From Selaginella moellendorffii (Eukaryota > Plantae > Lycopodiophyta): DNA of 64,000 nucleotides. The position numbers were made by a program, and so were the translations under genes. Position 1 is the first letter of the stretch. Each line of letters starts with the position of its first letter. The notes under the pieces were generated by a model, which saw nothing but the letters and a program-made list of their open reading frames with translations, did no database searches and was not told where the DNA came from. Positions 22,694 to 62,370 of the stretch are shown here, one piece after another. The stretch covers positions 24,973 to 88,972 of the forward strand of contig NW_003314390.1 of NCBI RefSeq assembly GCF_000143415.4, given 5' to 3'.

Positions 22694-22856
22694 CGCCCCC
22701 GAGAAATCGCGGCTATGGCGCCACTGCGAATTTGCCCTACCACTAGTGCTCTGTTTTAGGGCTCTTTACGAGAATATTCGACTATATTCGCCTTTTAATG
22801 AGAGTATTCCGTTATATTCGAAAATGATTAAAAGTCTGTTAACAATGAAATTATAG

Positions 22857-25221
22857 CTAATTAGCCGCCTCTTCTGTGACCATTTCTTCAATCACTGGCT
22901 GCTCGAGCGGCTTATCTTCATCCATTGGGGCCTCGGATTTCTGGCACAAAAGAGAAGAACATTTGGTGTAAAGAGATTTGGATCCAGAAAACTTAGAAAA
23001 CAAACCTGTTCCAACGCTTCGAGCTTGCTCAGCCTTGCGAACATGTTGCCATAGAGCTTGGCTTCCTTCTTGTTGTATTCTACTTGCTTTTGCTTCAGTG
23101 ACTTGTACTCCATTCTCAAGTCCCTGTAAGATAAACGCGTGAGCCCTGGTTTGATGCAACGCGATTAAACTATCTTACCGGTTTTGTGGATCAATCTCCA
23201 ACGCTTTCTTGATATCAAACTCGGCCAGGTCCAAATCTGCAGTGCGCGTGTAAGCTTGAGCTCTGCGGTAGAGAGCCTTTACGTTCTGCGACTCCAGCTC
23301 AAGCACCTAGAAATTCAAATGTAAGAAAACAGGTAGACAAGCGAGGAGACTCTCTAACCTTCGAGCAGCACTTGATTGCGTCTTTAAACTCGTTGAGCTT
23401 CAGCTTTGACGCAGCGTTGTTCAAGTTGCAAGAGACTTTGAGTGCCTTGGCTTGTTTCTTCTCGTCGTCACTAAAGTTGGAGTCGTAGTCAATAAACTTC
23501 AGGGCCTGAAATCCTTGTCAGGATGCAATTCATAATAGGAGCGATCGCATATTACCTGTTCGTACTTCTTTGAGGCACGAGCAAATTTACCAGCTTTGTA
23601 TAGAACATTGCCCTCGTCCTTACGGACGGTGGCTTCTTGCAGCTTCTCCTCTGCTTTGTGCAAGTCCCACGAGTCCTTTGCCTAAACAGAGCAAGTTAGG
23701 ACCTAGAAAATCACTGCAACGGAGATTACCTTCACAAAAGAGATCATTTCCACCTCATAAACCAGGGTAGAATTGGCAGGAACCAAAGCGAGATCCCGTT
23801 GAGTATCAACGTCTCCAAACCCGTGCTCAGGACCAATGGTAACAACTGCAACTTCTCCTTTCTTCATCGTCGCCACCGCCTTGTCCAACCCATCAATAAC
23901 TTGTTCTGAAAGAACTAAAACAAGTTAGCAACGGAAAACCCAGATTGACAAAAGACCTTCATCAGTTTTAAACTCGAAGGGATCCTCGTCGTCGCCTTTC
24001 TTCTCAAACACAGTGCCGTCCAAAAGCTTGGCCACATACTTGACTGCATTATCATTATCGTTAACAGAGAGCACGAGATGGTTTTAAGAAACTCACTTTT
24101 CACAATGGTTCCATCGTTGGGTTTGTCATGTCCTTCACTCGCCTTGATAATCTTCTTCGTAATTTTGCCATCTTGGCCGATTTTCTCAACAGTTTTCCAA
24201 GATACCAGCTCCAGATCGATAGAAAGTGTGCCCTGCGATTCGCCAAGACCATCTAGACGATCCAACGCATTAGAAACTTAGCTAAACACACACACAAACA
24301 TCTCACATTTCGGCCTCACGGTCAGCAAAGCTTTTTCCCCCTTCATCATCGTCTTGACAGCAATGGCAAGTGCTTCGCAAAAATGACCTGCGTTATCCGA
24401 ACATAGATTAAGCACATCTTCAGCATAACGAACGCGAGTCCTTACCTTGGTGAACATAAAACTCTGCCCCTTCCTCAGGAGACTGTCCAACTACAAGCCC
24501 AGCTTCATTCTTCGCGACGTACTTCACTGAAAGTAGTAGTGCAAGTGAGTCAAGGACCAAAGCCTGTTAGCCAAAAGCATACCAGTCACTTCGTCGAGAT
24601 CTTTCGGCATCTCATATTTTTTTCCCTCGGAAACAATCTTCTTCACCACGCCACCATCCTTGGAGATATCCTTGACGCTGTCCCAAGACAAGAGCTCAAC
24701 GTCAAACTTGAGCGTCGCATTGGGTGGTATGGTTGGCGGCGACCCAGCTTCTCCATAAGCCAAGGCCGGGGGAATGGTGAACACCGCGTTCTCACCCTTC
24801 TTCATTGTCTTAATGCCTTCGTCCCATCCCTTGATAACTTGGCCTACACAAGCACGAAGAAAGAAAAATCAACACCAGATAGAAATCCATAACTCGCTCA
24901 CCTTGCCCAAGCTTGAATGTGAAAGGATCGCCCCTATCCCTGCTCGAATCAAACTTGGATCCATCCAGAAGCGTTCCAGTGTAGTGAACTGCAAGAATCT
25001 ATCAGCATTGCGACGCCAGGGCGAGAGAGAAGAGCGCTACCTTTCACTTCATCGCCAGGCTCTGGCATCTCCCAGCCAGTTCCGGCCTTGACGAGCAGCT
25101 TCTTGAGGCCATTCTTGCCGATCTCTTGCTCCTCGCCGGCCTTGAGCGGAGCCGCCGATGTAGCTTCCATTCCGGCCTCTTCGTCCATACCCGCGTCGGC
25201 AATCTCGAAATCGTCCGCCAT
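22857..25221 (-). CDS. ROF1: Multi-domain TPR immunophilin, FKBP62/65 (ROF1/ROF2-like)
   Basis: Three FKBP domains ([41 protein letters not shown]), TPR exons, and [14 protein letters not shown] tail. Confidence 0.92.
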
Positions 25222-25483
25222 CGCCAGGAAGAGCACACAACACGAGCCCTAAAACTCAACTCCTTTATAAAAGTCGCAATAGATCCGATGGGTAAGTCAC
25301 GTGGCGCGATACAAGCCCTTGGATCTCCAATCCAACGACCCGAGACTAATTAAGATGCCAATATCCATAGCCTTCTAGATGCTTCTGCAGGCATATTCTC
25401 TCCGGCAAGGCATATTCTCCGAGAACCCTAATTGACAGAGCACGAAATATTTCTCGCCGGGCTAGGGTTTTATAGATCGCGCG

Positions 25484-27029
25484 ATGATTTACACGGCGCT
25501 GGATACATTCTATGTCTCCGAGGAACAGCTCAAGGCCTCGCCTTCGCGCAAGGATGGTGTGGCCGAGGAGACGGAGACAATGCTGCGGCTCTACGGCTGC
25601 GAGCTGATCCAGGAGAGTGGAATCTTGCTCAGATTGCCGCAGGCGGTGATGGCAACGGGCCAAGTCTTGTTCCACAGGTTCTATTGCAAGAAATCCTTCA
25701 CGCGATTCAATGTCAAGGTTTGTAATTTTTTTATCCTCTCCATCTAGGTGAGTCGAGACTGTTTTATCTTTGGTTTGAGTTTCACAGGATGACTGAGTGA
25801 GATTTTCATGGTGTTTTTTTGTAGAGAGTAGCGGCCAGCTGCGTGTGGTTGGCGGCGAAGCTCGAAGAAAGCCCACGAAAGATTCGAGATGTCTTGAGTG
25901 TGTTTCATCGGATGGAATGTAGGCGCGAGAATTATCCTCTCGTGCTACTCGACACAACTTCGAAGGCAAGGATTTCTTTTTCTTTCTTTTGCTTCTCGCT
26001 GTTGTGCTCAAATCGATTTTACAGGCTTACGAGGAAATGAAAGTCGATCTAATAAGAACCGAGCGGCATTTACTGAAAGAGATGGGATTCATTTGTCACG
26101 TCGAGCACCCGCACAAGTTTGTTCTCAATTACTTGCTCCAATTGAAAGCACCTCTCGAGCTCATCCAGGAAGGATGGAATTTGGCCAACGACAGGTAACT
26201 TGCTTTTCCACTTTCCAGTTTTCTTGAGTTTTTGTTTTATGTTCATCTAGCTTGCGGACGACATTGTGTGTGCGTTTCAAAAGCGAAGTTGTGGCATGCG
26301 GGGTGGTTTATGCTGCTGCTCGAAGGTTTCGTTACCCTTTGCCAGAAAATCCTCCGTGGTGGCTCATTTTCCAAGCAGATAAGGCCGAGATTGATGTCGT
26401 ATGCAAAGTTCTTGCTTTTCTGTATCAGCAACCCAAGGCTCACTACGTCGACGTGAGCAAAGGATCAAAGTCGTTCGTTTTGTCAAGCAGTTCATGGGAT
26501 CCTCCTCCAGATGTTCAAGTAAGAAAAACCTTTTACTGATGAGCGGTGTTTGATGATTTAAACTTTTATCAGGGCAAGATCACTGTGAATGGTACCACTG
26601 CTGGTGCTGTTCTTGTCCCGAGTGTGGCTGCTATCGTTTCAGCGGACACCAAAGACGAAGCGCCTCCTATGGCCGATCCAAAAGGAGAAATAGTAGCAGA
26701 AAAGCCTGCTATTGATGGTGAAGGCGTCGAGAAAACAAAGGAGAAAGATGAGAAAGACCGTGAGAAGGAGAGAGAACGAGACGCGAGACGCGATCGAGAT
26801 CGCGAAGAACGGCGAGATAGAGAAAAGAGTAGGGATAGAGAACGGGACCGAGACAGGGAGCGGGACCGGCACAAAGATCGAAGTCATCGAAAGGATAGCA
26901 GACGGGATTACAGTAAGTTCTTCGTCTTCTCTCTCGCAAACTTAACGTTTGGAATTGGTAGCAGGCTACTCGAGTGACAAGTCAAGGTACCATTCGTCCA
27001 GATCAAGTGATCGCCATCGACACCACTGA
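25484..27029 (+). CDS. CYCL1: Cyclin L1 with RD/RE-RS-rich tail
   Basis: [49 protein letters not shown]; HVEHPHKF; arginine-rich C-terminus. Confidence 0.95.
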
Positions 27030-27077
27030 ATCGATACAACGCTTTTGTACGTGTACGTGATTCTTGATTTAAATCCT

Positions 27078-28814
27078 CTAACATCGCTTGACCACTTGTT
27101 GTAAAAGATAAGAACTGTGCAGATTAGTGACACTCAAAACGCTCGTCTCTTCCAAGATGTCCGGAACATAAGGCATGCTCTTGATAAGATCTCGAGCGTC
27201 TTCCAAGTAACCGGCCCTGCAAAGCAAATCAACCATGCAAGCAAAGTGCTGCTTGGTTGGACGAGAAAGATAATCCATTTGCATTGAAACGAAGTAAGAT
27301 CTTCCACACTCCAACTTTCCAGCATACTTGCAAGCGATCAACACACAAACGAAGAACTCATCGTCGGGAACTCCACTTAAGCACCAGCTATGAAACGTAA
27401 AGAACGCCTCCGTGATATGCCCATTATGGGCATACGCTGCCATGAGAGAATTCCATGCTAACAAGCAGCAATGCTGCCATGGTATCGTATCAAAGAATCT
27501 TCTTGCATTGTGGATATGCCCGTTTCGGGCATATGCCGCCACCATGGAACTCCAGGCCAGGGAATCCTTCCATGGAATCCTTGAAAAGAGAAAGTAAGTG
27601 TAGTGCAAGTGACCCTTTCGGGAGTACGCCACCATCAGAGTCGTCCAAGAGATTACATCTTTTTGGAGCTCTGGAATTCGATCAAACACCTCTTTCGCTT
27701 CTTCCAAATGCCCGGCTTGGGCAAATGCCGAGAGAAGACAGTTGCTCACGACTGTGTTGTGCTGCGGGATCTCATCAAACATTTGCTTTGTCTCCTCAAG
27801 TTTTTCATTTTCCGCGTAGCTGTTCATGAGAGAGCTCCACGAAACAGGCTCCCGGATTGGAATCTCGTTTAGGAGTTTTCTAGCTCGATCAAATTGCCGG
27901 TGTTGGGCATAGAGAAGGATCATCCAAGTTACAGAGACTCGATTGTGTTGCGGCATTTTCGCAAACACAAGCTCTGCCTCGCTAGAATTTCCATCTAAAA
28001 CGTAGCATTCCAGGAGTGTGTTCCAGGAGACTATAGTTCTATGTGGCATTTTGTCAAATGTTCTTAAAGCCTCGCAAATATGCCCTGCCCGGGCATATGC
28101 CGCTATCATCGAGTTCCAGGATATAATATCCCACTCTGGAAAGTGGAATAAAAAAATATTCTCAGCATCAAGGATGGATGCTCGGGTATGTGTGTGGAAA
28201 AAGAAAATGGCGCTAAAGGTGATGAGATTCCTCTGTGGAATTCGATCGAACAGCTCCTGGGCTCTATCGAGATGCCCATTCCGAGAATATGCCAGGATCA
28301 TAATGTTCCAGGAAATGATATTGCGCGACGGAATTTGCTGGAAGATGGCCTGGGCATCTTCCAAGAGCTTGTTTTCCGCGTATGATCCGAGCATCGAGTT
28401 CCAGGATGCCAGATCTCTCGCGGGCATCTCGTCGAAGATATCCCTGGCCTGGGAGAGCGATCCCAGCCGGGCGACTGCCGCGAGCATCGAATTCCAGGAG
28501 ATTAGATCCCGTTGCGGCATCGCGTGGAAAACCTCCACTGCCCTGTTCAGCTGATCGTTGTGTGCGTAGGAGGCGAGCATCGCGTTCCAGGCGACGCAAT
28601 TGCGAGTGGGCATCGCGTCGAAGAGGAGCCTTGCTTCGTCCGGATGCCCGTTTTGGGAATACGCGCAGAGCATCATGATCCAGGAGAAATTGTCGCGCGT
28701 GTCGATCGAGATTCCGCGGAAGATCGCCTCTGCCTGCTTCACATTTCCCGATTTCCCGGATGCCTCGATCATCCTGTTGAGCGCCGGCACATCCTGCTCA
28801 AGAACGAAGATCAT
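27078..28814 (-). CDS. PLS-class pentatricopeptide repeat protein (tandem ~31-aa S-type repeats, truncated E domain)
   Basis: Repeated FDxMPxRDxxSWNxMxxAY units; HFACMVDLLCRAGYLEDARDLIKSMPY. First ATG at 28814. Confidence 0.9.
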   Translation of the reverse strand: MIFVLEQDVPALNRMIEASGKSGNVKQAEAIFRGISIDTRDNFSWIMMLCAYSQNGHPDEARLLFDAMPTRNCVAWNAMLASYAHNDQLNRAVEVFHAMPQRDLISWNSMLAAVARLGSLSQARDIFDEMPARDLASWNSMLGSYAENKLLEDAQAIFQQIPSRNIISWNIMILAYSRNGHLDRAQELFDRIPQRNLITFSAIFFFHTHTRASILDAENIFLFHFPEWDIISWNSMIAAYARAGHICEALRTFDKMPHRTIVSWNTLLECYVLDGNSSEAELVFAKMPQHNRVSVTWMILLYAQHRQFDRARKLLNEIPIREPVSWSSLMNSYAENEKLEETKQMFDEIPQHNTVVSNCLLSAFAQAGHLEEAKEVFDRIPELQKDVISWTTLMVAYSRKGHLHYTYFLFSRIPWKDSLAWSSMVAAYARNGHIHNARRFFDTIPWQHCCLLAWNSLMAAYAHNGHITEAFFTFHSWCLSGVPDDEFFVCVLIACKYAGKLECGRSYFVSMQMDYLSRPTKQHFACMVDLLCRAGYLEDARDLIKSMPYVPDILEETSVLSVTNLHSSYLLQQVVKRC

Positions 28815-28864
28815 TGATCTTGGCGCCAAAAGCTCTATTTAAAAATTAGGGCTCTTGGTTCCAG

Positions 28865-31369
28865 CTAGGGTTCTTGACGATAGGAGAATGTGGTGCCATC
28901 GCCATCCACGGCGATACTGAGAATCCCCGGCGCCTGGACATCGAAATGGAAGGTAAGTGGCGGCGGCTCGATCTCCTCCTCGCTCTCCAGCATTCGTACC
29001 ACTGCATCCATCGTAGGTCTAGCTGCTGGATCTTCTTGCACACACCAAAACGCTGCGTGGATCAAATTCTTCGCCTTTGCCGCGTCGGCCGACGCTCGGA
29101 TGCTCGGATCCACCACTTCCATCGCATTCCCTCTCTGGACTTCCCTCATGGCCCAGGCCGGGAAGTACGTGTCGACCTTGGCGCAATCCAGGTTTCTCCT
29201 CCCGCCGATGAGCTCCAAGAGCACCATCCCATAGCTGTAGACGTCGCATTTCTTGGTCGCTGTGGAGTGCATGAGCCACTCCGGAGCTAGATATCCTGGA
29301 GTTCCTCTCACTCCGGTGAGAACTCCATTCTCATCTTTGTCCATGAGTAGCTTCGCCATGCCAAAGTCCGCCACTTTGGCCTCAAACTTGTCACCCAGGA
29401 GGATGTTTTGTGGCTTGATATCCAAGTGGATGATCGAGTCTCTGGATTCCTCGTGCAAGTAGGCCAGCCCTCGAGCAGTGTCGAGAGCAATGCTGTGTCG
29501 AAGTTTCCAGTCCAGTTTGTTCTTGCTGTCCGAGAAGATCCATCTGTCCAAGGAGCCATTGGGCATGAACTCGTAGACGAGCAGTCTGTGTGAAGCTTCG
29601 GCACAAAAGCCGTGAAGTTTGACGATGTTGATGTGGCTTATGCCTCCCAGGGCCTGGACTTCTGCGATGAATTGTTTCTGTGCGTGTTGGGCGCTGAGTT
29701 TCTTCACAGCTAGCTTCATCTTGTTGTCAAGAACTCCCTCGTACACGGTGCTGTAGCCTCCTTGTCCCAGCACGGTTGTGAATCCTTTGGTGGCGGAGTG
29801 AAGGCCTCGGTATGAGAATTGGAAAGGTGACGCCTCCACACGGGTGAGAAAGCTGCTTAACTCTCTGAGTAAGACGTTTCTTCGATGCAGGGCAGCGAAC
29901 ATCACTGCGAGGATTGTAATAGCAATTGCAGCACTTCCAGAGGTAACTCCGATAACTATATGCTTCGCAGTTTCTGATCTTGGATGGTCCACAGGCACCA
30001 ACCTGGAGTAGTTCTGGTACTTCAGAAAGCCCACCAGCTGGTTCGCCTTGGATGGATCAAGTGTCAAGCTTCCCAGAACGTCTTCCACGTAAAAACAGTT
30101 TTGGAGTGCTCTGTCATAGAAGAATGCAGCGCAGCTGCAAGTGGATTTGCATTCCTCGAGGCATTCTTCCAACGGAGCACCTGTTCTATTCGGAGGATTG
30201 TAGCTGTCGGTGATGTATGAAGTGCCTGCCATGGTGACAAAATCGGTCTCATACCTGGTGCTGCAATTCTGAAGCGAGGACCATTCTGGCCTGGAGCATT
30301 TTTCAGGTACCGAGGTAGTCGAGTTGTTTGTTTCATTGGTGAAGCACTGACACTGCTTTCCTCTCTCAAACAGTCCGTAGCTCCCGCATGGAACCGGTTG
30401 CTGGAAATATTGATCTAAGGTCTCTAGCTGCCAGCTTCCATTGGCGAATTCTCGCCTGAAAGAAACGATGATTCCATCGTTTCCGAACTGGAAATACCTC
30501 ATGGTAGTGTTTCCTGGGAATATTTTTCCGTTCCGGGAGGAGCCGCACGGCTGCTGGTTACCACCTCCACTACTTACAGGTTCGTATGCCAAGCTGATTT
30601 CTCCTGCGGATGATAAACTCACTGCTGTTCTAAATCCTGCGCAGGTTCCAGTGGCTGAGCTTAAACTCGTTCCGGTGAGGCTCCATAACAAGTACGGCTG
30701 TTTTGCCTTTGGAGGGTTGCGCATGTACGCTACCATTCCACTCGGCTCGACTTGTAGGATAAACGGACCTTCGCTTGGATCTGAAGCGTCTTTGTTACTT
30801 ACCAGGACCTGTCCCGTCACTAACTTTTGATTTGGCAGGAGTGCGTTACTCGGATGATCGAAAAACTCCCATACGGTGATCCGAGATTCATTGTAAAGCT
30901 GCAAATTCCCCGAATTCTCGATGCCGATGAACGCAGTGCTTTGCTCTGAGGACCACGCGATAGAACCATTCCTATCGAGCAGCTGCAACCGGCCATCCAC
31001 TCGGGTAAGCATGCAATTCTCAGTTACTGGAATGTCCCGGTTGGCTATCCAGACAGGGGCAGCTGTGGACGAATTGCGAGTGCCAAACATCAATGCCAGG
31101 TAGTACTTGTTTGTTCCGTTGAAGTTCAAGAATGCTAAGCCAAAATTCTCATTGTCGCTGAGCAGAAGTTCGCGTGTTCTTGGAGTCCTGCCTTCCGCGA
31201 CCGCGCTTAGCAAACGATAGCTTCCGGACCTGCCATCACCTGGAGATTCAGGGGCACTCTCATTGATGAAAGTTCTCCATCCCTCGGGTATCGGGTATAG
31301 CTTTCCTTTACATCTTACAATTAACAACGCAAGTCGCAGGAGGAACAACGCAACCACTTGCTGCTTCAT
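28865..31369 (-). CDS. G-type lectin S-receptor-like kinase (SD-2 type), intronless
   Basis: Signal peptide, bulb lectin (VWIANRD, GNLQLY, WEFFDHPSNALLP), EGF/PAN Cys, TM, kinase HLDIKPQN (non-RD), DFG, GYLAPE. Confidence 0.96.
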   Translation of the reverse strand: MKQQVVALFLLRLALLIVRCKGKLYPIPEGWRTFINESAPESPGDGRSGSYRLLSAVAEGRTPRTRELLLSDNENFGLAFLNFNGTNKYYLALMFGTRNSSTAAPVWIANRDIPVTENCMLTRVDGRLQLLDRNGSIAWSSEQSTAFIGIENSGNLQLYNESRITVWEFFDHPSNALLPNQKLVTGQVLVSNKDASDPSEGPFILQVEPSGMVAYMRNPPKAKQPYLLWSLTGTSLSSATGTCAGFRTAVSLSSAGEISLAYEPVSSGGGNQQPCGSSRNGKIFPGNTTMRYFQFGNDGIIVSFRREFANGSWQLETLDQYFQQPVPCGSYGLFERGKQCQCFTNETNNSTTSVPEKCSRPEWSSLQNCSTRYETDFVTMAGTSYITDSYNPPNRTGAPLEECLEECKSTCSCAAFFYDRALQNCFYVEDVLGSLTLDPSKANQLVGFLKYQNYSRLVPVDHPRSETAKHIVIGVTSGSAAIAITILAVMFAALHRRNVLLRELSSFLTRVEASPFQFSYRGLHSATKGFTTVLGQGGYSTVYEGVLDNKMKLAVKKLSAQHAQKQFIAEVQALGGISHINIVKLHGFCAEASHRLLVYEFMPNGSLDRWIFSDSKNKLDWKLRHSIALDTARGLAYLHEESRDSIIHLDIKPQNILLGDKFEAKVADFGMAKLLMDKDENGVLTGVRGTPGYLAPEWLMHSTATKKCDVYSYGMVLLELIGGRRNLDCAKVDTYFPAWAMREVQRGNAMEVVDPSIRASADAAKAKNLIHAAFWCVQEDPAARPTMDAVVRMLESEEEIEPPPLTFHFDVQAPGILSIAVDGDGTTFSYRQEP

Positions 31370-32047: not shown

Positions 32048-34594
32048 ATGTACGCAATGAAGCTGCTTATTGTCTCAGTCTTCCTGGTGTGGATGATTTC
32101 TATACTTGCGCACGGAACCAAGTATCATCTGCCACAAGGGTGGGAAGTAGTAAACAACAACAGGCTGCCAGAATTCACAGCATCACAAGGCAACGCGAGC
32201 TATCGGCTGCTCCAAGCGGGTAACACATCCCTCGTAAGTCAGGATGGGAGATTTGCTTTATCCTTCTTCCGATTCAATGACTCGCCCAGGTACTACTTTG
32301 CATTAGTCTTTGGTGCCAGCAATTATACGAGCAGCTCAGCATCAGGTGTCTGTGTTTGGAGTGCAAACCGGGACAATCCTGTTACTGAAAATGCGACTCT
32401 TCAACTCTCGGATCAAGGTCTGTTGCAAGTTATGGATTCAGATGGAAGAGTGGTCTGGAATTCTCCCCGTGGAGTTTCTGGGATAGAGGTTCAAGACAGT
32501 GGGAACGTCGTTCTCTACGACTCCACAGGTGGTGTCTCCTGGCAGAGTTTCGATCATCCTACAGATGTTCTCTTGGAGGGACAGGTTATAGTTACGGGAC
32601 AGAGCCTCGTGAGCAGCAGCAGTTCATCGAGCCTGTCAAGTGGGAGCATGAAGATGGAAGTTGTGGCAAGCGGTCTTATTTTCTTGCTGGAGCTTGATAC
32701 CGTGCAGCCTTACCTGGTTTGGAACATGTGGAATGGTAACTTGCCGTCGGACGTGACATCGATCAACACGTCGTGCCCGTCTTATCGAATAGCTCTCCAT
32801 TATTCTGCTGGAAGTGTAGAAGGGAGATACCAGGCAACAAGAAACAACACCAGTGATCAGCCATGCGGGCCTCCCACCGCCGCAGTACTTGGAAACTATA
32901 GCAGCACTGACTTACACTATCTCAAACTTGACATCGATGGAAAGCTGATTCCTTACATCTATAACTTTGGACGAGCTTCGTGGGAATCCGGCCAGCCTTT
33001 CATGAGCAACATATTTGGATCCTGCCTCCCGATGACGTGCGAGTCACACAGTGTTTGCGCCGGAAGCTCTCAGTGCAGCTGTATAGTCCAAGGCCAGGAT
33101 GGGGATCAGGAGCAAACTTGCCCGAGTCCGAGCGACATACCTCTCGTGTGCAACCACGAAGTCGAGGCTGAGAACCACCATTTTTTCAACGTGACTGGAG
33201 CAGGCTACTTCTCCAACAATTACACCAAGGCCGACAGAGTTTCCACCTTGAGCGATTGTTGGAACTTGTGCCTATCGAATTGCTCCTGCAGCGCACTCTT
33301 TTACAACAAGCAGGCAAGCACCTGTTTTTTCGTCGACCGGATGTATGGAGGCCTCACCAGAGATCCAAACTTCGATGGTTTCCTCAAGCTACAAAACGCA
33401 GAGCTTTTTGTGCGGGAGGGGCCCAAGGATCGCACACTTTTGCTTGGAGTGAGCATTGCTGCCGGCTTTGTTCTGCTATTAACCTTGGGCTTGGTCGCGC
33501 TGAGAATCTGGAAGCACAAACTCGACAAGGACGCAAGAACTTTGTCTCTGGCACTGCAAGGCTCGGCTCAGAAGTACGCTTACAGGGAGCTTGAGGTGGC
33601 GACTGCGAGCTTCTCGTCAAGCGTTGGAAAAGGTGGCTATGGAACTGTGTTTAAAGGGACGCTGGCAGACGGTAGACAGGTGGCAGTCAAGCGTCTGGAA
33701 GATCCCAAGCACAGTGAGAAGGGATTTATCGCAGAGATGGCCTCGCTGGGACGGATTAGCCACCACAACGTCGTCCAACTCTATGGCTTTTGCTCCGAGA
33801 AGAACCAGCTCATACTCGTCTACGAGTTTATGGCAAACGGATCCTTGGATAAGTGGCTGTTTGAGGATGGCTGCCTGGGATGGGAGATACGCCGGAGTAT
33901 TGCTCTTGGATTGGCTCGAGGTCTGGCTTACTTGCACGAGGAATCGCGGCAGCTTATCATCCATCTCGACATCAAGCCCGACAACGTTCTTCTCGACGAT
34001 AAGTTTTGTCCCAAGCTCGCAGATTTTGGCTTGGCAAAGCTGGCCAAGAGCCGGGACGCAAGCCAGACCGTGACTGATGTTCGAGGAACTCCAGGATATC
34101 TCGCCCCGGAGTGGCTCTTAAACTCGGCAGCGACGAAGAAATGCGACGTCTACAGCTATGGCATGGTGCTGCTGGAGCTCATAGGTGGGCGAAGGAACCT
34201 CTCCAAGCGTTTTATCTTCGGCAGTGGCGGGCACGACGATCGCTCCATGGACGAGGAAGAACGGGCTTTGTGGTGGTACTTCCCGGCCTGGGTCGTGGCT
34301 CTAGCGAGAAAAGGGGAGTTTCTCCGGGTTGTGGACGCGAAGATCCGAGACACTGTAGAGGAGGATCAAGTGAGAAAGCTCGTCCAGGTCGCGCTGTGGT
34401 GTATCCAGGATGATCCAAGGAGAAGGCCGTCGATGGATGCAGTCGTCCAGATGCTGGAAGGCCGGAGGGAGATTTCGGAGCCGCCACTCTCCTTCCGGTT
34501 TGCGTTGAAATCTCCGGGAGTTCTTCGATTTGCTTCCACTGCTTCCATGGGCGTAAGCGTGGCGGTACCGACTGAGCTCTCAGGTCCAAGGTAG
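32048..34594 (+). CDS. G-type lectin S-receptor-like kinase (SD-2 type), intronless
   Basis: VWSANRDNPV, WQSFDHPTDVLL, PAN domain, TM, HLDIKPDN (non-RD), DFG, GYLAPEW. Confidence 0.96.
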   Translation: MYAMKLLIVSVFLVWMISILAHGTKYHLPQGWEVVNNNRLPEFTASQGNASYRLLQAGNTSLVSQDGRFALSFFRFNDSPRYYFALVFGASNYTSSSASGVCVWSANRDNPVTENATLQLSDQGLLQVMDSDGRVVWNSPRGVSGIEVQDSGNVVLYDSTGGVSWQSFDHPTDVLLEGQVIVTGQSLVSSSSSSSLSSGSMKMEVVASGLIFLLELDTVQPYLVWNMWNGNLPSDVTSINTSCPSYRIALHYSAGSVEGRYQATRNNTSDQPCGPPTAAVLGNYSSTDLHYLKLDIDGKLIPYIYNFGRASWESGQPFMSNIFGSCLPMTCESHSVCAGSSQCSCIVQGQDGDQEQTCPSPSDIPLVCNHEVEAENHHFFNVTGAGYFSNNYTKADRVSTLSDCWNLCLSNCSCSALFYNKQASTCFFVDRMYGGLTRDPNFDGFLKLQNAELFVREGPKDRTLLLGVSIAAGFVLLLTLGLVALRIWKHKLDKDARTLSLALQGSAQKYAYRELEVATASFSSSVGKGGYGTVFKGTLADGRQVAVKRLEDPKHSEKGFIAEMASLGRISHHNVVQLYGFCSEKNQLILVYEFMANGSLDKWLFEDGCLGWEIRRSIALGLARGLAYLHEESRQLIIHLDIKPDNVLLDDKFCPKLADFGLAKLAKSRDASQTVTDVRGTPGYLAPEWLLNSAATKKCDVYSYGMVLLELIGGRRNLSKRFIFGSGGHDDRSMDEEERALWWYFPAWVVALARKGEFLRVVDAKIRDTVEEDQVRKLVQVALWCIQDDPRRRPSMDAVVQMLEGRREISEPPLSFRFALKSPGVLRFASTASMGVSVAVPTELSGPR

Positions 34595-34610
34595 CAAAAT
34601 TTGAATGAGT

Positions 34611-34701
34611 GGATATGCCTGGAATATGCGAATTTTAAACTTCTATACCGAGCTAGAATATTCTTACATAAAGAGTTGGCATATGCTCTTTTCTAGGGTT
34701 T
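34611..34701. promoter_or_regulatory. Four GNATATNC (P1BS-like) motifs plus telo-box
   Basis: ggatatgc 34611, gaatatgc 34622, gaatattc 34656, gcatatgc 34679; ctagggttt at 34693. Confidence 0.7.
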
Positions 34702-34710
34702 GTGGAAGCT

Positions 34711-36878: not shown

Positions 36879-37002
36879 CGAGCCAAAAAGTGTAAGATAA
36901 GCTCTCTTTTTAGGGCAAAATAGGATATCTCAAAAGCCCTAAACAGGGAAGGCAAACAGGATATTCCAAATGGAGCTGGGAGGGAATTTTAGGGCTAGAG
37001 CA

Positions 37003-42262: not shown

Positions 42263-42575
42263 GGGTGGCGAAGAAAAAAATAAAACTGCAGACCGAATTT
42301 GGGTCGCTTGACTTTGTCAAGTAAAGATGTTTATCGAGAATATTCTAAAATGTTACGAATATGGCCTTTTTCCCCCAAAACTGTAAGCAAAACTACGGCA
42401 GTAAATATAAAAGTATTTTCTTGTAACCTAATGCCACTGGCCTAGGTGGCACTCTTCCCGTTTGTGCCGTCTGGAATATTCAATAGAATGTTCCTTTGTT
42501 TAAATAAATGTTCTTTTTGTTTGGTATATTCTGTTTATGGAGCAAAAGGAAGATGCTTGAGCAGAGATGGAGTAG

Positions 42576-46926: not shown

Positions 46927-47205
46927 TTGATTAATGCACAAATATAGGGGAAATGAACAGGAAAAGTGTGTGTTGTAAGTTTTGAAATGATACATGTTTA
47001 AATACTCAGATAAATTTCACCAAACAGGATAGATTCAAATCATATCAAATTTGATTGGGAAAGATGGTTGCCAAACACTGAAACTTCAATCGAAACAACT
47101 TAAGGTTTACGAATATTCTATGATATTTTAAGTTATGAAACATTGTTATTACTTAAGTAGTTTTATTAGAAGAAATGGAAACCACACAAACAATATAAAT
47201 CGCGA

Positions 47206-49399: not shown

Positions 49400-52120
49400 A
49401 CTTTATTGCTTTAAGGTTGAAAAAAATGGTTTAAATTTTTGTCATTAAGTTATTATTTTTTGTTGATATTTGTAACCTAAATTTTAAGAAAATAGTTTTA
49501 AGACTTTATGTTTTGTTGTTAGTAGTCATTAGATTTAAAGTCAAAATTAATTTTTTTAATTGATATTTTTAATTTCTATTTATGACTAAATTTTAAGAAA
49601 TTTATAATAGTTATAAATAACAAACTAATATATTTAGTTATTATGTTTGAATAAATTTTAAGTCATTATTGTGATGATATTTTAAGTTGTTATAATTAAA
49701 GACAATTTTAGTTGTTTATAGTAAAATATAAAATAAATAGCTGATAGTTTAATTTATAACCAATAAATCACAGTTGAAGCTAATATAGAGCTAACAAAAT
49801 TGCATATCTTGAGCTAACATAGGCTATCAGCAAATCATACACAATAATCCATAATAAAGTGTTATGATCAAACATACTATATGTTGATGTGGCAAATACA
49901 AGATTAAGAGTGATACCATACTAGGATAACTTTGAGTGCTACTAAATAATATAATTTTTCATCACTTGTCCTTGTTTGTGATTGTCTTTAGCTTCATTTT
50001 GCTGAAGTTTTGTTACTACAACAATCTTTTTGATTTAGTTTTTGAGAGGCAAGTCAAGGTGAAACATTCCCACAATAATGCCATTAAGGAAATAAATCAA
50101 TTCATATTAAAAAACATGAAAGAGAAATTTATATTGTTGTACCCACCTTACAAGTGAGTTGCAACTGAGTGACCAACACAAACCACCCTTAATCTTAACA
50201 ATGTCATCTATAATAGTAGCATTAGCCAGTGCTTCATAGGAAACTCTCTCTTAGGAAAATTTAGGAAGATATAATTGGAACATAGTCACCTTTAGATCAT
50301 TGTGGAAGCATCATTATGATGTTCTTGTTGTCTTCAAACCTCACAAGTTGCAACAGATCAATAAATCATGTATAGAAATTAATTTTTTCAATGGAAGCAT
50401 CCTTGCAACACTAGTGGAAAATCACAATTTACAAGTTAGTTTTTCTGTTTTGAGAAATCTAAGAAATCTTCTACTTGGAGGAAAACTAGAGCCAACTTCA
50501 ATGTTACAACTTAGAGCCACTGAAAGTGTTAAAAGTATCATACCTTGAATAGATAAAAGTTTAGACTCAGCCCAATAAAACAAAGAACGACTACTCTTAC
50601 CATACTCTAATTCTACTATACTCTTACTTGTATCCATTTTATGTTTGGATGTAGGAGAAGATTGACAATACATAGTAGTGAGTGATGAGAGAAATCAAAG
50701 GAAAATTTTCATACTTACCATGAACTCCTTGTAGTGAAAACCATGAGAATCACTAAACTCCTTACAGTGCAGGATATTCCTTAAATATCCCAAGATCCTT
50801 GGAGTGCAAGAGAGACAATATAGGGCAATCATGGTTAGCACAAAATAAAACTACTTATATTCTAATCACCACAACCCAAAGAGAATTCATCTAGAGCACC
50901 TTCAAGCTTTTAAAATAGGAAAAATGAAAACTCTAAAGTCAAAGACAAGCATTAAGACCACTTGCCTTGCCAAATGCTAGTACCTATATCTAAGACTTAG
51001 CCATATTTCTGAATAACTGATAAAAATATTTACAAAAACTAAACAAGTAAAACTATAAGTTCATCATGAATATACCTTCTTGATAATCATGAAAATACTT
51101 TTCTTTCTTAGGTCAAGAAGGCAAAATGAATCACATCATTTCTTACCTTAAAGCACAATGTTTGGGATCCAAATTGCACTAGGGCTTTGCTTTGTAATTC
51201 AAAGAAAGCTTGGAGTAGTAGGAATGTATACCAGATTTGTTTGGAGAGCCTTCGTCCAAATAATGACAAATTAATACTAAATAGTATTAAAAATTACTTA
51301 TGTTATGAAATGATCTATTGTTTGGCTTGATATTCTAGTAGTAACTTGAACATTTAAATTAATTAAAAAAGTAGATAAAATAGAAGTACTAACCCCTCCA
51401 TAAATAGGTAATAAATTGTCTTCACTCCCATGTAATCATTTAGAGAAATAATCAAATGCATTATTATCCTTAATATTATCATTGTCACCACCATTACCAC
51501 CACCTAAATTCATACCACCATCATAGGAATTATAAAACTGTCACCAATTTCAAAATATTGTTATGTTAAAAATAAATCTACATAATTTAATCCCTTTGAT
51601 ATCTTCCCCTAGAAATGTATTGAAGGATGTTTACTATAAAGATGAATATAATCTGTGATAATCCATATGAGGCAAATATGATTACCTCCACACCTCAAAC
51701 ACTAGCATACAACTTTGATTCCTAAATCCTAGATAAGGAAATATAGCTTCTTATTAGCTTTAATAAGAATATCCTTTATTAAGAAGTTTGTAATTGAATT
51801 TTTTTACTGCAACATCTTAACGACTTATATTTTAGTTGCTACTAAGTTGCATTTAACTAATGAAATGGTCTAGTTATAAAGAATAAACTGTAAATTGCAA
51901 CAATAAATTATGATATATATTCTGTTGTAAAGAATAACTCCATTTTCTAACTAAATTTTGTATGAATATAAAAAATTTCATAAATTGCAACATAAAATTT
52001 GTAATTAAAGCCAATTTGCTACTAATATTTTAAGTAGTTAAAATTTACAGCTTAAATTAACACAATTGTTTTTGTTAAATAACATATCTTTATAATGCTA
52101 TTGTGTAACAATGATCCTTT
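49400..52120. mobile_element. AT-rich decayed transposon relics (retroelement gag/protease-like and possible CACTA pieces)
   Basis: Very low GC, CpG-depleted, no intact ORFs; recurrent ttgcaac/ttgctac short motifs at 51800-52030. Confidence 0.4.
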
Positions 52121-53291
52121 ATTATCCAAGGCCCTGCTTAAACCACCTTTTCTTCTTTTTTAGGGTTTGTCAAATATAACTGCAATGTCAAATTGGTGAC
52201 TACCTTGAGGGGCACAATGGCATATCTTCACAAACAAAGCCTTCATCAGCGTTGTTCATTGATTTGGACTGTCTTATGATTGTCCAGGACTTTGATTTGA
52301 TCATTAAGACATCACAAAAACCTAGCACATTGATGCAAAACTCTCATAGCCATGATTGTTTCCTCTAGATCATTAGGGATTTGCAGAAATTCCAGCCGAT
52401 TATGGAGCAGTACTGCCACACATGCTGGGGTGATTAAGGCAGCGAGCTGAGGAGCTCACCAAGAACATGTTACCCTTCTGACCGCCAAATGACCTGTTTG
52501 TTTAAAAGTTGCATTACTATATTTATTTAAGTTTTCAGTCTAGGCATATTCTAAAATATTCACGGTCAAACGATGATATGCTGCACCAAATCCAGCTTCA
52601 GGAAACTCCCCACTCCCCATTGCAGTTGCTGAGGGATTCTGTGTACAGTCTATATGAGAGGATTTTTAACACTTGGGCTTATGAAATCTGTGGTAAAGAA
52701 CCTGGCCAATATCCAACATATTGTCCTTGTATTTAGTTCAACTTGAGCAAGAGAGATTTAGACATTCCATAATCTTTTAATAAGATCTCATGGCTGTCTT
52801 GTCTCTGTTGCAATTTAGAGTTGAGGATATTTGATTTCCTGCTTGGCATATTCTAATTTCCCCAGAGAAAATCCTATTATAACTGCTTGTGAAGTTTGAA
52901 GAGTTGCTATTTGCAAATGAGGGATTGGGCTGCTAGAACTTAACAAGGTTTAGCTGTTTTTCTATCAAAAGCTCTCACTTGAATAGTTTGATTGGTACCC
53001 TTTAGAGAGATCTGGTCTTCAATTCTTGTGCACACAAGCTATTAGACACAGTTTCTAAGAATTAAGTTAGGACATAGAACTTGGGATTCGCTTGAATAGG
53101 AAAAAAAACCAACATAAAAAAATCATAATACTGATCTCATGGTTGCAATGAGGATGCTCCAATACCAAACATATAAAATTTAAGCAGTGACATCTAGAAA
53201 TCAAATGATGATGCCTACTAGCACAATTGGTGGCAATTATTAAAGTCCTTTAAGCAAACCAAAACACTTTTTAGCTAAACTAGGTTATCCA

Positions 53292-56387: not shown

Positions 56388-59167
56388 TCACCCCCTTTTC
56401 AGTTTCTTCAAACCTTTCTTCACCTCTTCCACAGCATCCAGCAATTCCGTGTTGACAATCCCCCGAAGTTTCCGACCAGCCCAAACAGCCGACAGAGGTG
56501 AAACCTGAAGGACAAAATAAACATGTCAAAAATCAAATGAAATATGCCTTACCAGGGGGATTTCTTTGTGCCCCTTTCTCGCTCGCCCACTCCACCACAC
56601 ATCTCCGAAGGCCACCTTTCCTACCCTTGGATGTGGGTTTGGTGAAACAACCAGCCTAAGGTAGCCAGTCCAGCACCACTGTTTTAGTTTTCGACAGGCT
56701 CCTCCTGAATGCAGCATCTTGTCAATCTTCATGATGTCGAGTGAGGAAAAAGCTTGAGTCACACCCAGCCCAGATCCGGTCCTGAACTGTAGAAACACAG
56801 GCATCATCTTGTGCGACTCTTTGCTTCTGAGAAGAAACATCCCATCTGGTCCAGCTTCTTGGAATGGTCCAAGCCATGCATAAGTAGCAAACGATGCACC
56901 AGCCTCAACAGCTTCAAGCCACAGGTTCAACTGTTCTTCAGTCTGAATCTCCTGAACCAGCACCCCCGAGTGCCCTCTTGGCTTTACAACTTCATACTCC
57001 TCCTTGTAGACCACATCTGTTTCCTGCAAACCCAAAACCTCAGCTGGTAGCTTGTTGTCAAATGCCTCCCCCACGATGCATGCAAACCGCTCAAAGGTAA
57101 TGCCACGGACTGATGCGTTTGCAGCTGTGCTGATGACTCGCTCCATTACTGTACCAGCAGGCATATGTTCCCAGAGTGCTTCTGCAATCATCGGCTCTTG
57201 AAGGATCACGTATTGCACGTTAACCAGACCTGAAGAACCAGGTCCGGCTTCATCACCCCTCACCCCTCTTATGTGTGGAATGATCGGTGCAAAAGGTCCA
57301 GCACTGGCATCACTCTCAAGCAGCGTTGCAAAGCCACAATCCACTAAGGTCATGATACTCCTCTTCCGCTGCACAATAACATGACCAAAACCTGGAAAAG
57401 ACCAGCATGAGGAATATATCTGTAAAGAATCAGTGACACATACCTGTAAGATAATACGTGAACAGAATGTCCTCAATCATTTGTGCCGTCTCTGGATCAT
57501 CCCACACCCGCTCCGCTTCATCCCTTAAAGACCGAAGAAGTCCAAGCTCCACCCCAGGCTTTTTGATCAACTCCAAGAAGAAAACTTGGAACCAATCCTC
57601 TGGTGGTTTGTCCTGCACAACGTACTTCTCAATCGCCGTGCTCAAAAGTCGCCTTCTTCCAGTGTACATGGAAGTAATCGCGGGCATGTCCAGCCTGCTG
57701 ATATCTATAAACCGTTGGAGAAAGGCTGGAATGTTGGTGTCGTCAAAGCCAGGTAAACTATATATTTCTCTTACATCGAAAGGCTTCACTGTCCCTCTCA
57801 GAAGTCTTTCCCGAACCTTAAGCATATTCGTGCCGGTGCCCGCAACAAACAAGCAGCTCTTCAAGAAACGGTACGACTTCAGAGCCAGTAACATGGGGCT
57901 CAACAACGGCTGCCCTTTCGTAGGACTGAGTTCAGACTTGAATCGACCTTTCATACAACGAAGCAGCATTTGAGCCTCATCAAGGACAACCACCCCCTCC
58001 TTCCAACCAATGTCATCTGCAAGATTCCTTATAACCTCCTTCAGCTGATCCATAGGCAGTTGCTGATCCACTGGAACACAATCGATCAAGGCTTCAACCG
58101 CAGCACGGAAGACATCATCAACTGCCGGGTACTCCAACTGGAAAAAAGCCCAATCACGAGGATGAAGCCCAGGTTTCATCGCTTTCAGCAACTTCAAATA
58201 TTTCAGCCGGACAAGAATCAAAATCCCAACACCAAACCGCACCACTGCATGATTCGGATCAAGATCGTGTTCACCTGCGGGGAACCGAGTCTCCATCCAT
58301 CTGGCAACCCTGTCTACATCATTCGATCCTCCTCCAAATCCAACCATTGGACGCTTACCCGTGAAAAACAAGGTGAATCTACTGCAGGCAAGTTCAATCA
58401 ACATTCTCGTTTTTCCTGAACCGCTGGGAGCCAAGAGCACGGTGGTGTGGCGTTCTGACAACCTCTGCGCAAACCGATTGTCGAGCTCCACAAGTCCATC
58501 TCCTACGCCTTCCCATAAAAGGCATGGCAGGTTACTAAGCGCGCACATGAGTGTCCGGGCCGAGGGAAATTTCGCCTTACAAGCCGACTCGTGAGGAGCC
58601 AACCGAGATATGAACTGCGATTTCGTGGAGATGGAAGTATCACACACCTGTGATATGCCCAATCCTGTTATGGTTGTTTTTGTTTCTGTTTCAGACAAGA
58701 AAAGGAGTGAGCAACATAGCCAACATGGTGTGACCACACTGGCCCAATCGACTAATTACAAAAGATCGCAGAATACCAACGATCCAACAGCACGAGAGCC
58801 CAACAAGCCACGAACAAAAGCCTGACGCAACAGCACACGACGCCATAGGCTGAAGCAACCCAGAGCACAGAACAGCAAAACGCCCCAAATCGAGGGGGAT
58901 AGCTAAATACACAAAGAATGACTTACCATTACTTCTGAGGAGGAGGAGTTTTTTCTCCCGCAGCAGTTCTTCCTCCTTCCGCAGCTGTTCTTTCTTCTTC
59001 CGCAGCTGTTCTTTCTTCTTCCGCAGCTGTTCTTTCTCATTCCGCCAATATTCCGCCAGAGATTGATTGCCACTCTGAAGGGCAGAGAGAAAAGATTCCC
59101 CAGCCGCTTGGATCTGCGGCTCAAGAAGCCCGATTTGAGCCACCACCTTAGCCAATTCCTCGTCCAT
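56388..59167 (-). CDS. Crinkler/RHS-like protein: coiled-coil header + P-loop NTPase + PD-(D/E)XK nuclease (812 aa)
   Basis: Exons 59167-58927, 58685-57444, 57391-56553 and 56504-56388 join in frame. Walker A APSGSGKT, Walker B VVVLDEAQ, AGTG, GRRR; nuclease GITFE..AGPDGMFLL..PVFLQFR. Confidence 0.8.
58955..59045 (-). repeat. 21-bp tandem repeat encoding the heptad EQLRKKK
   Basis: ccgcagctgttctttcttctt, about 4 degenerate units. Confidence 0.9.
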
Positions 59168-59369
59168 TTTGCTAGCTGAAACCCTATCTTGAAACCCTCT
59201 TGTATGGGACGGTTTAGGGTTTAGGGTTATATTAAAATATAATTAATTATAATAAGTCCTTGATTATAAACGAGCGAAGCAACATGGATCAAAGAGAAAA
59301 CGAGGGGCATAGGAACAGAACACAACAGTCATAGCCAGACAAACAAACGCGAAGCAAGAGAAGCCATAC

Positions 59370-59571: not shown

Positions 59572-59652
59572 TTAGAAAACCTTTTATGATCTTTAAAGCA
59601 TCAAATGCAGTAGCATGAACAAAACAAGATCTGCATCCAGCTTGTTAGCTTG

Positions 59653-60384: not shown

Positions 60385-60694
60385 CTGCATGTACACCAGA
60401 CAATGAGCAAATTGATAGGAGACCAAGATATCAGGAAAGAGAATTGAAAAACATGTATCACATAAAATATATAATCACGTATGCAGGATCACGAAGAATA
60501 TTTATGTTGTCACCTTGATAAACATAATAGAAATTATAACAAAACACAAGTGTTAAAAGTAAACTTGAGTAAAAGAGGCAACAACACTGATCGTTTAAAA
60601 GAGATGCGGGGTAAAATTCTTAAAAATAAAGAAAACTATGATTCGATCTACACCGTCCCTTTACACGCATAGACAACGGCTTAGATTTGGAGTT

Positions 60695-61989: not shown

Positions 61990-62231
61990 TCCTCTGGCAA
62001 GAGAAGAGAGCAAGAAACGAGAGCTGAGAGAAGGCCTACATTCTTTGAAACAACGCGCATTACCTTGCTCAGATCCAGCAAGAACCAGGAACTCCAATGC
62101 CAGATCCCGCGGAAGTCGCTGTTATTCTCGGGTGGCCGGCGCCATCGATCGAGCGAGCGTCGTGGTGCCCTGGCGCAACCCTCGGAAAAATGTGAAGAGG
62201 AAGAATTTTATTATTTTCAAAACCCTCCTAG

Positions 62232-62348
62232 GAATATCCTATTCCACGTCATCAATAGAATATCCATGAACAGCGGAAGGATATTCTACAGCATAGTTAG
62301 CGGAATATCCTGGTCAACAGAATATGGCTACTTATAGACAGAATATTC
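62232..62348. promoter_or_regulatory. Five GNATATNC (P1BS-like) motifs upstream of the DUF4057 gene
   Basis: Matches at 62232, 62258, 62279, 62303 and 62341. Confidence 0.72.
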
Positions 62349-62370
62349 TTAAAGTTGATTGATTTTGTGC

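What the first reader, a model, noticed from the sequence alone, without database searches (positions are those of the whole stretch)
22760..62350. GNATATNC (P1BS-like) clusters mark the promoters of many unrelated housekeeping genes
Seen: perfect GNATATNC sites cluster in tiny intergenic spacers. There are 5 in 117 bp before DUF4057 (62232-62348), 4 in 76 bp before CCDC97 (34611-34686), 3 before the PPR (42338, 42474, 42524), 2 before cyclin L1 (25391, 25410), and 1 plus near-matches before WDR82 (22772) and ISCA2 (36959). Most have a telo-box-like TAGGG motif nearby. Chance expectation from base composition is roughly one per 3-4 kb. Known: GNATATNC is the PHR1/MYB-CC phosphate-starvation element, but these genes are not classic phosphate-response genes. 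Inference: in this lineage the motif may be a general promoter or gene-boundary element in a compact genome.
Basis: partly seen in the sequence, partly recalled or inferred. Interest (0 to 1): 0.78.

Follow-up and report, generated by a model that had tools for sequence, protein, structure and literature searches.

The report
P1BS-like motif arrays in spikemoss promoters
In this stretch of the spikemoss Selaginella moellendorffii genome, tight clusters of the plant "phosphate-starvation" DNA motif really do fill the tiny promoters of several unrelated everyday genes. In other regions of the same genome the motif marks only about one promoter in seven, so it is a subset signal and not a general promoter mark.

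Summary
GNATATNC occurs 38 times in the window against 11.5 expected, and the clusters sit at the stated coordinates. Three same-composition control motifs are not enriched. The arrays are not tandem repeats. The real motif is a 10-bp palindrome, RGNATATNCY (22 hits against 3.2 expected).

With gene calls for 22-64 kb, 15 of 29 sites lie within 300 bp upstream of a start codon. Four others are coding by-products of the PPR "AAYA" motif.

The window is S. moellendorffii scaffold GL377694.1. In nine independent loci of this genome (204 kb, about 57 promoter spacers) the motif is only about 2x over chance. It is about 2.7x denser in upstream spacers than elsewhere. It occurs in 8 of 57 spacers, and no promoter has three or more sites. 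So it is a subset element, not a general promoter or boundary mark. The telo-box is the commoner proximal mark here.

The most likely mechanism, which is inferred, is homotypic arrays of sites for a dimeric PHR1-type MYB-CC (GARP) factor. Whether phosphate controls them is untested.

The scan has flagged similar arrays elsewhere in this genome.

The assembly gap lies inside a PPR coding region, more than 1 kb from any site, and does not affect the finding.

The parts
22755..22830 (.). Promoter spacer of the WD40 (WDR82-like) gene (minus strand, ATG 22693). It is also the 3' flank of the FKBP-TPR gene (stop 22857). It holds one perfect site at 22772-22779, three one-mismatch sites with an (A/G)TATTC core, and the telomere heptamer at 22755-22761.
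25358..25452 (.). Divergent 262-bp promoter between FKBP-TPR (minus strand, ATG 25221) and a cyclin-like gene (plus strand, ATG 25484). It has two perfect sites (25391, 25410), both GGCATATTCT, and near-matches at 25358 and 25445. Telo-boxes lie at 25247, 25424 and 25463.
34611..34700 (+). Array of four perfect sites (34611, 34622, 34656, 34679) in the 116-bp spacer between the receptor-kinase stop (34594) and the CCDC97 ATG (34711). The sites are 100 to 32 bp before the ATG. A telo-box follows at 34694-34700.
36909..36994 (+). Upstream region of the ISCA-type Fe-S gene. It has one perfect site at 36959-36966, a near-match (GGATATCT) at 36924, and three telomere heptamers (36909, 36937, 36988). 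The region is 45 bp before the ATG at 37004 or 263 bp before the called ATG at 37222.
42338..42531 (+). Three perfect sites (42338, 42474, 42524) plus near-matches in the 313-bp spacer before the PPR gene (ATG 42576).
47111..47118 (-). Single site 185 bp upstream of the ATG (46926) of an unnamed minus-strand gene, in AT-rich DNA. This may be chance.
62221..62348 (-). Array of five perfect sites (62232, 62258, 62279, 62303, 62341) plus one near-match (62319). It lies upstream of DUF4057 (minus strand, ATG 61989) and 23-139 bp past the CrcB stop (62371). A telo-box-like AAACCCTC abuts it at 62221.

Best explanation
The clusters are homotypic arrays of a 10-bp palindromic site, RGNATATNCY. This is an extended form of P1BS. 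They lie in the proximal promoters of a subset of Selaginella moellendorffii genes.

The most likely reader of these sites is a dimeric GARP factor of the PHR1 (MYB-CC) subfamily. Several dimers would load side by side within about 100 bp of the start codon and set the transcription level of those genes. They would act next to, but not specifically coupled with, the more widespread telo-box.

What is shown:
- the motif, its extended consensus and its clustering;
- its placement on the promoter side of spacers;
- its limited frequency in the genome sample.

What is inferred:
- the identity of the factor;
- activation as the outcome;
- my leaning that this is a broad PHR/PHL-type regulon rather than a strictly phosphate-starvation one.
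For: Enrichment and specificity:
- GNATATNC is 3.3x enriched in the window.
- The extended RGNATATNCY is 6.8x enriched, 22 vs 3.24.
- Control cores of the same composition are not enriched.
- The arrays are not tandem repeats. Each site sits in unrelated flanking sequence.

Placement in the window:
- Of 29 sites in the gene-mapped 22-64 kb, 15 lie within 300 bp upstream of an ATG. That is 4.36 kb of such DNA, or 3.4 per kb. Two more lie at -314 and -352.
- Sites occur in tandem and divergent spacers but in neither convergent spacer.

Site composition:
- Half-sites in the spacers are GAATAT (19), GCATAT (6), GGATAT (6) and GTATAT (1).
- Near-matches keep the ATAT core and lose the outer G or C.
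- This fits the PHR1 site GNATATNC better than the stricter NIGT1 site GAATATTC, which only 6 of 17 sites match.

Independent loci:
- Nine loci have 73 sites against 33.1 expected.
- Upstream spacers there have 0.68 sites per kb, against about 0.25 per kb outside them once PPR coding regions are removed.
- For the 10-mer the figures are 0.41 against 0.11 per kb.
Against: - There are no binding, expression or transcription-start data for these genes.
- Start codons, not transcription starts, were used as the reference point. Some sites at -16 to -36 may be inside 5' leaders.
- The independent sample is small (about 57 spacers) and centred on PPR genes. Counts were made by hand from tool outputs after the scripting machine was lost.
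- The upstream excess in that sample is modest. My Poisson estimate is P of about 0.005, and weaker once paired and duplicated sites are allowed for.
- No orthologous promoters from other species could be fetched, so conservation is untested.
- Several extended-consensus sites lie in distal or 3'-flanking DNA (window 50771-52845; L011 12238-13267) without a called gene.
Confidence: 0.6

Rival explanations
1. In this lineage the motif is a general promoter or gene-boundary element of a compact genome. It would be present at most genes and would insulate or terminate between closely packed neighbours.
For: - Arrays sit in very short tail-to-head spacers of 116-381 bp, sometimes closer to the upstream stop codon than to the next ATG. 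An example is 62232-62348.
- 7 of 17 spacers in the window carry a site.
- Other scan notes report arrays before many unrelated genes. These are leads only.
Against: - Only 8 of about 57 spacers in nine independent loci carry a site, and none has three or more. L002 has no site in any of its 11 promoters.
- Neither of the two convergent spacers in the window has a site.
- Arrays occur in divergent promoters with no 3' end.
- In the 1.1-kb spacer before ISCA the site is at the promoter end.
Confidence: 0.12
2. This is ordinary P1BS function. These genes would be true phosphate-starvation targets of PHR1-type factors, and the arrays would simply give strong induction when phosphate is low.
For: - The sequence matches P1BS exactly, including the base preferences at the N positions.
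- PHR1-like proteins exist in Selaginella (PMC11082045).
- Some arrays elsewhere in this genome are reported before phosphate-linked genes such as a PHR-like regulator and an inositol-pyrophosphate Nudix. These reports were not checked here.
Against: - The genes here have no known link to phosphate. They are WD40, FKBP-TPR, cyclin-like, CCDC97, ISCA, PPR and DUF4057.
- No Selaginella phosphate-starvation transcriptome was found in the paper library, so nothing supports induction.
Confidence: 0.2
3. The sites are read by another GARP or MYB-type factor: a NIGT1/HRS1-type repressor, KANADI, a LUX-like factor, a CCA1/RVE-type factor, or a heat-shock factor (GAAnnTTC).
For: - GAATATTC, which is 6 of the 17 spacer sites, is also the palindromic NIGT1 site (PMC11082045).
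- The same octamer fits GAAnnTTC.
- Half-sites fit the KANADI hexamer as I recall it from memory. That was not tested.
Against: - 11 of 17 spacer sites are not GAATATTC and break at least one GAA or TTC arm, while the ATAT core is kept.
- The outer G and C and the R/Y flanks do not fit the evening element.
- The full palindrome points to a symmetric dimer, not a monomeric GARP.
Confidence: 0.1
4. This is not a functional element. It would be base-composition chance in AT-rich spacers, a local tandem duplication, a mobile-element fragment, or poly(A) signals of the upstream gene.
For: - Some isolated sites lie in AT-rich DNA. The apparent array at L007 141-252 is in an AT-rich stretch, about a quarter G+C as I judged by eye from the sequence. 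The site at window 47111 is another.
- PPR coding regions generate the motif through AAYA codons.
- A 21-bp duplication abuts the sites at 42474 and 42524.
Against: - Same-composition control motifs are absent from the array-bearing spacers.
- Array probabilities are about 1e-7 by my arithmetic.
- TRF finds no repeat in four of the five multi-site arrays.
- The R/Y flank preference is not explained by composition.
- Arrays occur in divergent promoters with no upstream 3' end, which rules out poly(A) signals.
Confidence: 0.03

Closest known systems
P1BS, the PHR1-binding site GNATATNC, read by MYB-CC (GARP) dimers
   Same: It is the same 8-bp palindrome with the same tolerance at the two N positions. 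It is located in promoters and often occurs in more than one copy.
   Different: - Here there are up to five copies in about 120 bp, within about 100-350 bp of the start codon.
- The genes downstream have no evident phosphate link.
- A purine/pyrimidine flank extends the site to 10 bp.
- Binding and phosphate response are untested.
NIGT1/HRS1 palindromic site GAATATTC
   Same: It is a subset of the same motif and is read by a dimeric GARP factor that Selaginella also encodes (PMC11082045).
   Different: Most sites here are GCATAT or GGATAT variants that are not the NIGT1 palindrome.
Telo-box (AAACCCTA) of plant housekeeping and ribosomal-protein promoters
   Same: It is a short element concentrated just upstream of the start codon. 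It is published as enriched in Selaginella ribosomal-protein gene promoters (PMC3212954). It lies within 16 bp of a P1BS-like site in four of the seven site-bearing spacers.
   Different: - It has a different sequence and a different reader (TRB-type proteins).
- It is commoner here, at about 11 of 19 genes.
- It is no more frequent in spacers with the P1BS-like motif (4 of 7) than in those without (6 of 10).
Yeast general regulatory factors (Reb1, Abf1, Rap1) at promoters of compact genomes
   Same: These are Myb-type factors at nucleosome-free promoters between closely packed genes.
   Different: No evidence of insulation or termination was found here, and the motif is absent from most promoters sampled.

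Membership tests
P1BS (PHR1-binding site) | Sequence is the palindrome GNATATNC | tested here: met
   38 perfect sites, 17 of them in short upstream spacers. The extended RGNATATNCY has 22 hits against 3.24 expected.
P1BS (PHR1-binding site) | Bound by a dimeric MYB-CC factor of the PHR1 subfamily | not testable with these tools
   There is only literature support that Selaginella encodes PHR1-like proteins with the coiled-coil domain (PMC11082045).
P1BS (PHR1-binding site) | Lies in promoters of phosphate-starvation-induced genes and confers that induction | not testable with these tools
   The gene families here do not suggest it. No Selaginella phosphate-starvation transcriptome was found.
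NIGT1/HRS1 palindromic site | Strict GAATATTC | tested here: not met
   Only 6 of the 17 spacer sites are GAATATTC.
General core-promoter or gene-boundary element | Present at most promoters of the genome | tested here: not met
   8 of about 57 upstream spacers in nine independent loci carry a site, and 7 of 17 in the window.
General core-promoter or gene-boundary element | Marks gene ends whatever the orientation of the neighbours | tested here: not met
   Neither of the two convergent spacers in the window has a site. Arrays are present in divergent promoters that lack a 3' end.
General core-promoter or gene-boundary element | Fixed position relative to the transcription start | tested here: inconclusive
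   Most upstream sites lie 16-110 bp before the ATG, but transcription starts are not known here.
Telo-box | Telomere-repeat heptamer in the proximal promoter | tested here: met
   AACCCTA has 13 hits against 5.0 expected, and 9 of the 11 in the mapped part lie within 60 bp of an ATG. Nine of ten CCCTAAA hits lie within 100 bp of an ATG.
Tandem repeat or mobile-element fragment | Copies share a period or flanking sequence | tested here: not met
   TRF at score 30 reports nothing in the arrays at 22772, 25391, 34611 and 62232. It reports only a 21-bp duplication at 42482-42522.

The most novel reading that the evidence does not exclude
In Selaginella a PHR/PHL-type MYB-CC factor has been recruited as a constitutive activator of housekeeping promoters. 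Together with the telo-box system, dense arrays of its palindromic site would define, and perhaps insulate, the very short promoters of a large set of RNA-processing, organelle-biogenesis and PPR genes, independently of phosphate.
Probability: 0.2. Interest if true: 0.7.

Novelty: new variant of a known kind. Interest (0 to 1): 0.45.

Why it matters
If these arrays are bound by a PHR-type factor at genes unrelated to phosphate, the best-known plant nutrient-response element has a much wider, lineage-specific use in a lycophyte. That would bear on how MYB-CC regulons evolved. It would also warn against reading every P1BS hit in non-model plants as phosphate control.

There are two practical points for motif scans of this genome:
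- PPR coding regions create the motif through the AAYA peptide.
- The extended 10-mer separates signal from chance much better than the 8-mer.

Tried and rejected
- **Orthologous promoters in other species.** None could be fetched.
- **Left part of the window.** The look-up for the F-box ORF at 13301-13963 found nothing, so 1-22 kb has no gene calls. That part holds Copia and other retroelement ORFs and an F-box ORF.
- **Scripting.** The machine was lost. Later positional counts were made by hand from tool outputs, and no k-mer discovery or permutation test could be run.
- **L007 141-252.** This apparent four-site array is plain AT-rich DNA and was discounted.
- **Helical phasing.** Of 22 neighbour distances, 13 fall within 2.6 bp of a multiple of 10.5, which is near the 50% expected. 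I found no phasing.
- **Coupling to the telo-box.** Four of 7 site-bearing spacers have a telomere heptamer, against 6 of 10 of the others. There is no specific coupling.
- **Literature.** I found no paper describing P1BS-type motifs as a promoter feature of Selaginella. The csRNA-seq study that mapped Selaginella transcription starts does not mention it in its text.
Full report
**1. Source and gene map**

An exact-protein look-up placed the window on Selaginella moellendorffii assembly GCA_000143415.2, scaffold GL377694.1. A second look-up covered the right half. Together they give gene calls for window positions 22-64 kb, covering 19 genes. Those next to the clusters are:
- a WD40 gene (minus strand, ATG 22693);
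- FKBP-TPR (minus, 22857-25221);
- a cyclin-like gene (plus, 25484-27029);
- a PPR gene (minus, 27078-28814);
- two lectin receptor kinases;
- CCDC97 (plus, 34711-35903);
- an ISCA-type gene (plus, called ATG 37222);
- two unnamed genes;
- a PPR gene (plus, from 42576);
- DUF4057 (minus, ATG 61989);
- CrcB (minus, 62371-63708).

Pfam scans agree for the kinase, CCDC97, PPR and CrcB. The cyclin label is only weakly supported when searched exon by exon.

**2. The observation**

GNATATNC occurs 38 times against 11.5 +/- 3.1 in shuffles.

Three control motifs with the same base composition but a rearranged core are at or below expectation. None falls in the array-bearing spacers.

Tandem Repeats Finder sees no repeat in the arrays at 22772, 25391, 34611 or 62232. 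It sees only a 21-bp duplication beside two of the PPR-promoter sites. So each site sits in its own flanking sequence.

Adding one flanking base on each side gives RGNATATNCY, a 10-bp palindrome. It has 22 hits against 3.24 expected. That means 58% of the octamers carry purine/pyrimidine flanks where about 28% would by chance.

Half-sites in the spacers are mostly GAATAT (19), then GCATAT and GGATAT (6 each), and rarely GTATAT (1). Near-matches inside the arrays keep the ATAT core and lose the outer G or C.

**3. Where the sites are**

In the mapped 22-64 kb there are 29 sites:

| Location | Sites |
|---|---|
| Within 300 bp upstream of a start codon | 15 |
| At -314 and -352 (DUF4057 array) | 2 |
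| Inside genes | 5 |
| Distal intergenic | 7 |

- The 15 proximal sites lie in 4.36 kb of such DNA, or 3.4 per kb. The shuffle rate is about 0.18 per kb.
- Four of the five genic sites are in one PPR coding region. Two of these were checked and are the codons of the conserved AAYA(R)xGH motif.
- Site-bearing spacers are tail-to-head or head-to-head. Neither convergent spacer has a site.
- In the one long tail-to-head spacer, before ISCA, the site is at the head end.
- The DUF4057 array is the exception in its distance. It is 243-359 bp from the ATG and close to the CrcB stop.
- The intervening sequence there looks like a 5' leader with a short upstream ORF and a splice donor. That reading is my inference.

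**4. How general is it?**

I sampled nine other loci of the same genome by looking up PPR paralogues found. These are L002-L008, L010 and L011: 204 kb on nine different scaffolds, with about 62 gene starts in about 57 distinct spacers.

- They hold 73 sites against 33.1 expected from shuffles.
- 21 of the 73 are inside the PPR coding regions themselves.
- Upstream spacers (14.6 kb) hold 10 sites, or 0.68 per kb. The rest, without the PPR coding regions, has about 0.25 per kb.
- My Poisson estimate for that excess is about 0.005. It is weaker once paired and duplicated sites are discounted.
- For the 10-mer the contrast is 0.41 against 0.11 per kb.
- Only 8 of about 57 spacers carry a site. Two carry a pair (L005 9965/9985 and L010 9922/9960). 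None carries three or more.
- L002 has no site in any of its 11 promoters.
- An apparent four-site array at L007 141-252 is simply AT-rich DNA.

So the motif is a real promoter-side element in this genome, but of a subset of genes. The window's richness (7 of 17 spacers, three arrays) is not typical. It is partly what one expects when windows are flagged because they contain arrays.

Genes carrying sites in my sample include:
- PPR genes (4 of 11 PPR promoters);
- a plastid ribosomal protein S6;
- a ubiquitin-conjugating enzyme;
- an FtsJ/Spb1-type methyltransferase gene in two duplicated copies;
- a signal peptidase;
- a WW-domain protein;
- a light-harvesting protein.

None of about 13 receptor-kinase or transcription-factor genes had one. 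This trend is suggestive only.

**5. Telo-box**

- AACCCTA occurs 13 times against 5.0 expected. Nine of the 11 hits in the mapped part lie within 60 bp upstream of an ATG.
- Nine of ten CCCTAAA hits lie within 100 bp of an ATG.
- About 11 of 19 genes have such a heptamer, so it is the commoner proximal mark.
- Its enrichment in Selaginella ribosomal-protein promoters is published (PMC3212954).
- It is no more frequent in spacers with the P1BS-like motif (4 of 7) than in those without (6 of 10).

**6. Mechanism**

A symmetric 10-bp palindrome with a fixed ATAT core and tolerant second and seventh positions is the published site of PHR1-subfamily MYB-CC dimers. NIGT1 dimers need GAATATTC. Selaginella encodes both kinds of protein (PMC11082045).

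Only 6 of the 17 spacer sites are GAATATTC, so a PHR1-type reader fits best. Heat-shock factor, evening-element and GATA or I-box readings fit fewer sites.

Neighbouring sites are at least 10 bp apart and show no helical phasing. That is compatible with several dimers side by side.

Everything beyond the sequence pattern is inference. This covers binding, activation, and whether phosphate status matters.

In Brassicaceae, conserved sites of most G2-like factors are reported to sit mainly in introns, not at transcription starts (bioRxiv 10.64898/2026.02.05.703842). If the proximal placement holds genome-wide, it would be a lineage difference.

**7. Assembly gap**

The gap at 43557-43702 is inside the PPR gene. 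The sequence before it ends at the start of a PPR repeat. The sequence after it begins in the second helix of a repeat, and both sides score as PPR.

With 146 N the frames agree, and about 48 missing residues would equal one repeat plus the missing part. The gap length is only an estimate, so continuity is plausible but unproved.

It has no bearing on the motif. The nearest site is more than 1 kb away.

**8. Earlier notes of this scan**

Nineteen notes on P1BS in this genome describe dense arrays before unrelated genes. These include an XIP aquaporin, a GDP-fucose transporter/CBS pair, a PHR-like regulator, an F-box gene, a Nudix gene and an RRM block. One follow-up states that the motif is common in this species' promoters.

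I treated these as leads. My own sample agrees that arrays recur, and it puts a rough number on how common single sites are.

**9. Limits**

- The scripting machine was lost, so later counts were made by hand.
- Transcription starts, expression data and orthologous promoters were not available.
- The independent sample is small.

Noticed in passing
window 27512-28292; L003-L008 and L011 around 10200-12500: PPR coding regions are themselves rich in GNATATNC, about 0.9 per kb (21 sites in nine PPR genes). The cause is that the conserved AAYA(R)xGH peptide is encoded as GCA-TAT-GC. Any genome-wide scan for this motif in Selaginella needs to mask PPR genes.
   Followed up: yes
L005 9965-9996 and L010 9922-9973: Two PPR promoters on different scaffolds share an extension of the site, GNATATNCCGTC. 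It appears twice as a direct duplication in L005 and twice in L010. It may be a PPR-promoter variant of the element.
   Followed up: partly
L008 5105 and 16942; 8780-9450 and 21555-22254: A duplicated block of about 12 kb carries an FtsJ/Spb1-type gene and a PPR gene twice. The single site 70 bp before the methyltransferase ATG is kept in both copies, as are three sites upstream of the PPR.
   Followed up: no
L011 12238-13276: Four sites with the full RGNATATNCY consensus lie 100-1100 bp past a PPR stop codon where no gene is called. All nine hits in this locus carry the purine/pyrimidine flanks. There may be an unannotated promoter here.
   Followed up: no
window 50771-52854: Four extended-consensus sites (two of them GGCATATTCT) and a telo-box at 52159-52167 lie in a 5-kb AT-rich stretch with no called gene. 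This could be an unannotated transcript or a distal element.
   Followed up: partly
window 27029-27078, 28814-28865, 34594-34711, 58179-58218: Gene packing is extreme. There are 48 bp between two convergent stop codons, 50 bp and 116 bp between a stop codon and the next ATG, and 38 bp between two tandem genes. Untranslated regions and promoters must overlap.
   Followed up: no
window 59211-59228: 2.6 tandem copies of the telomere unit (GGTTTAG) lie 45-60 bp upstream of the ATG at 59167. That gene is the upstream one of the pair that another note on this window (s1-388256) read as alternative header exons of the NTPase-nuclease gene.
   Followed up: no
window 62063-62160, minus strand: The presumed 5' leader of DUF4057 contains a seven-codon upstream ORF and what looks like a splice donor. 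That suggests a leader intron. This was read by eye only.
   Followed up: no
window 1638-3153 and 15237-18494: There are retroelement ORFs here: Copia-type reverse transcriptase (RVT_2), and a second retroelement-like ORF pair recognised by eye only. They lie in the unmapped left part of the window. Three isolated motif hits fall in these elements.
   Followed up: partly
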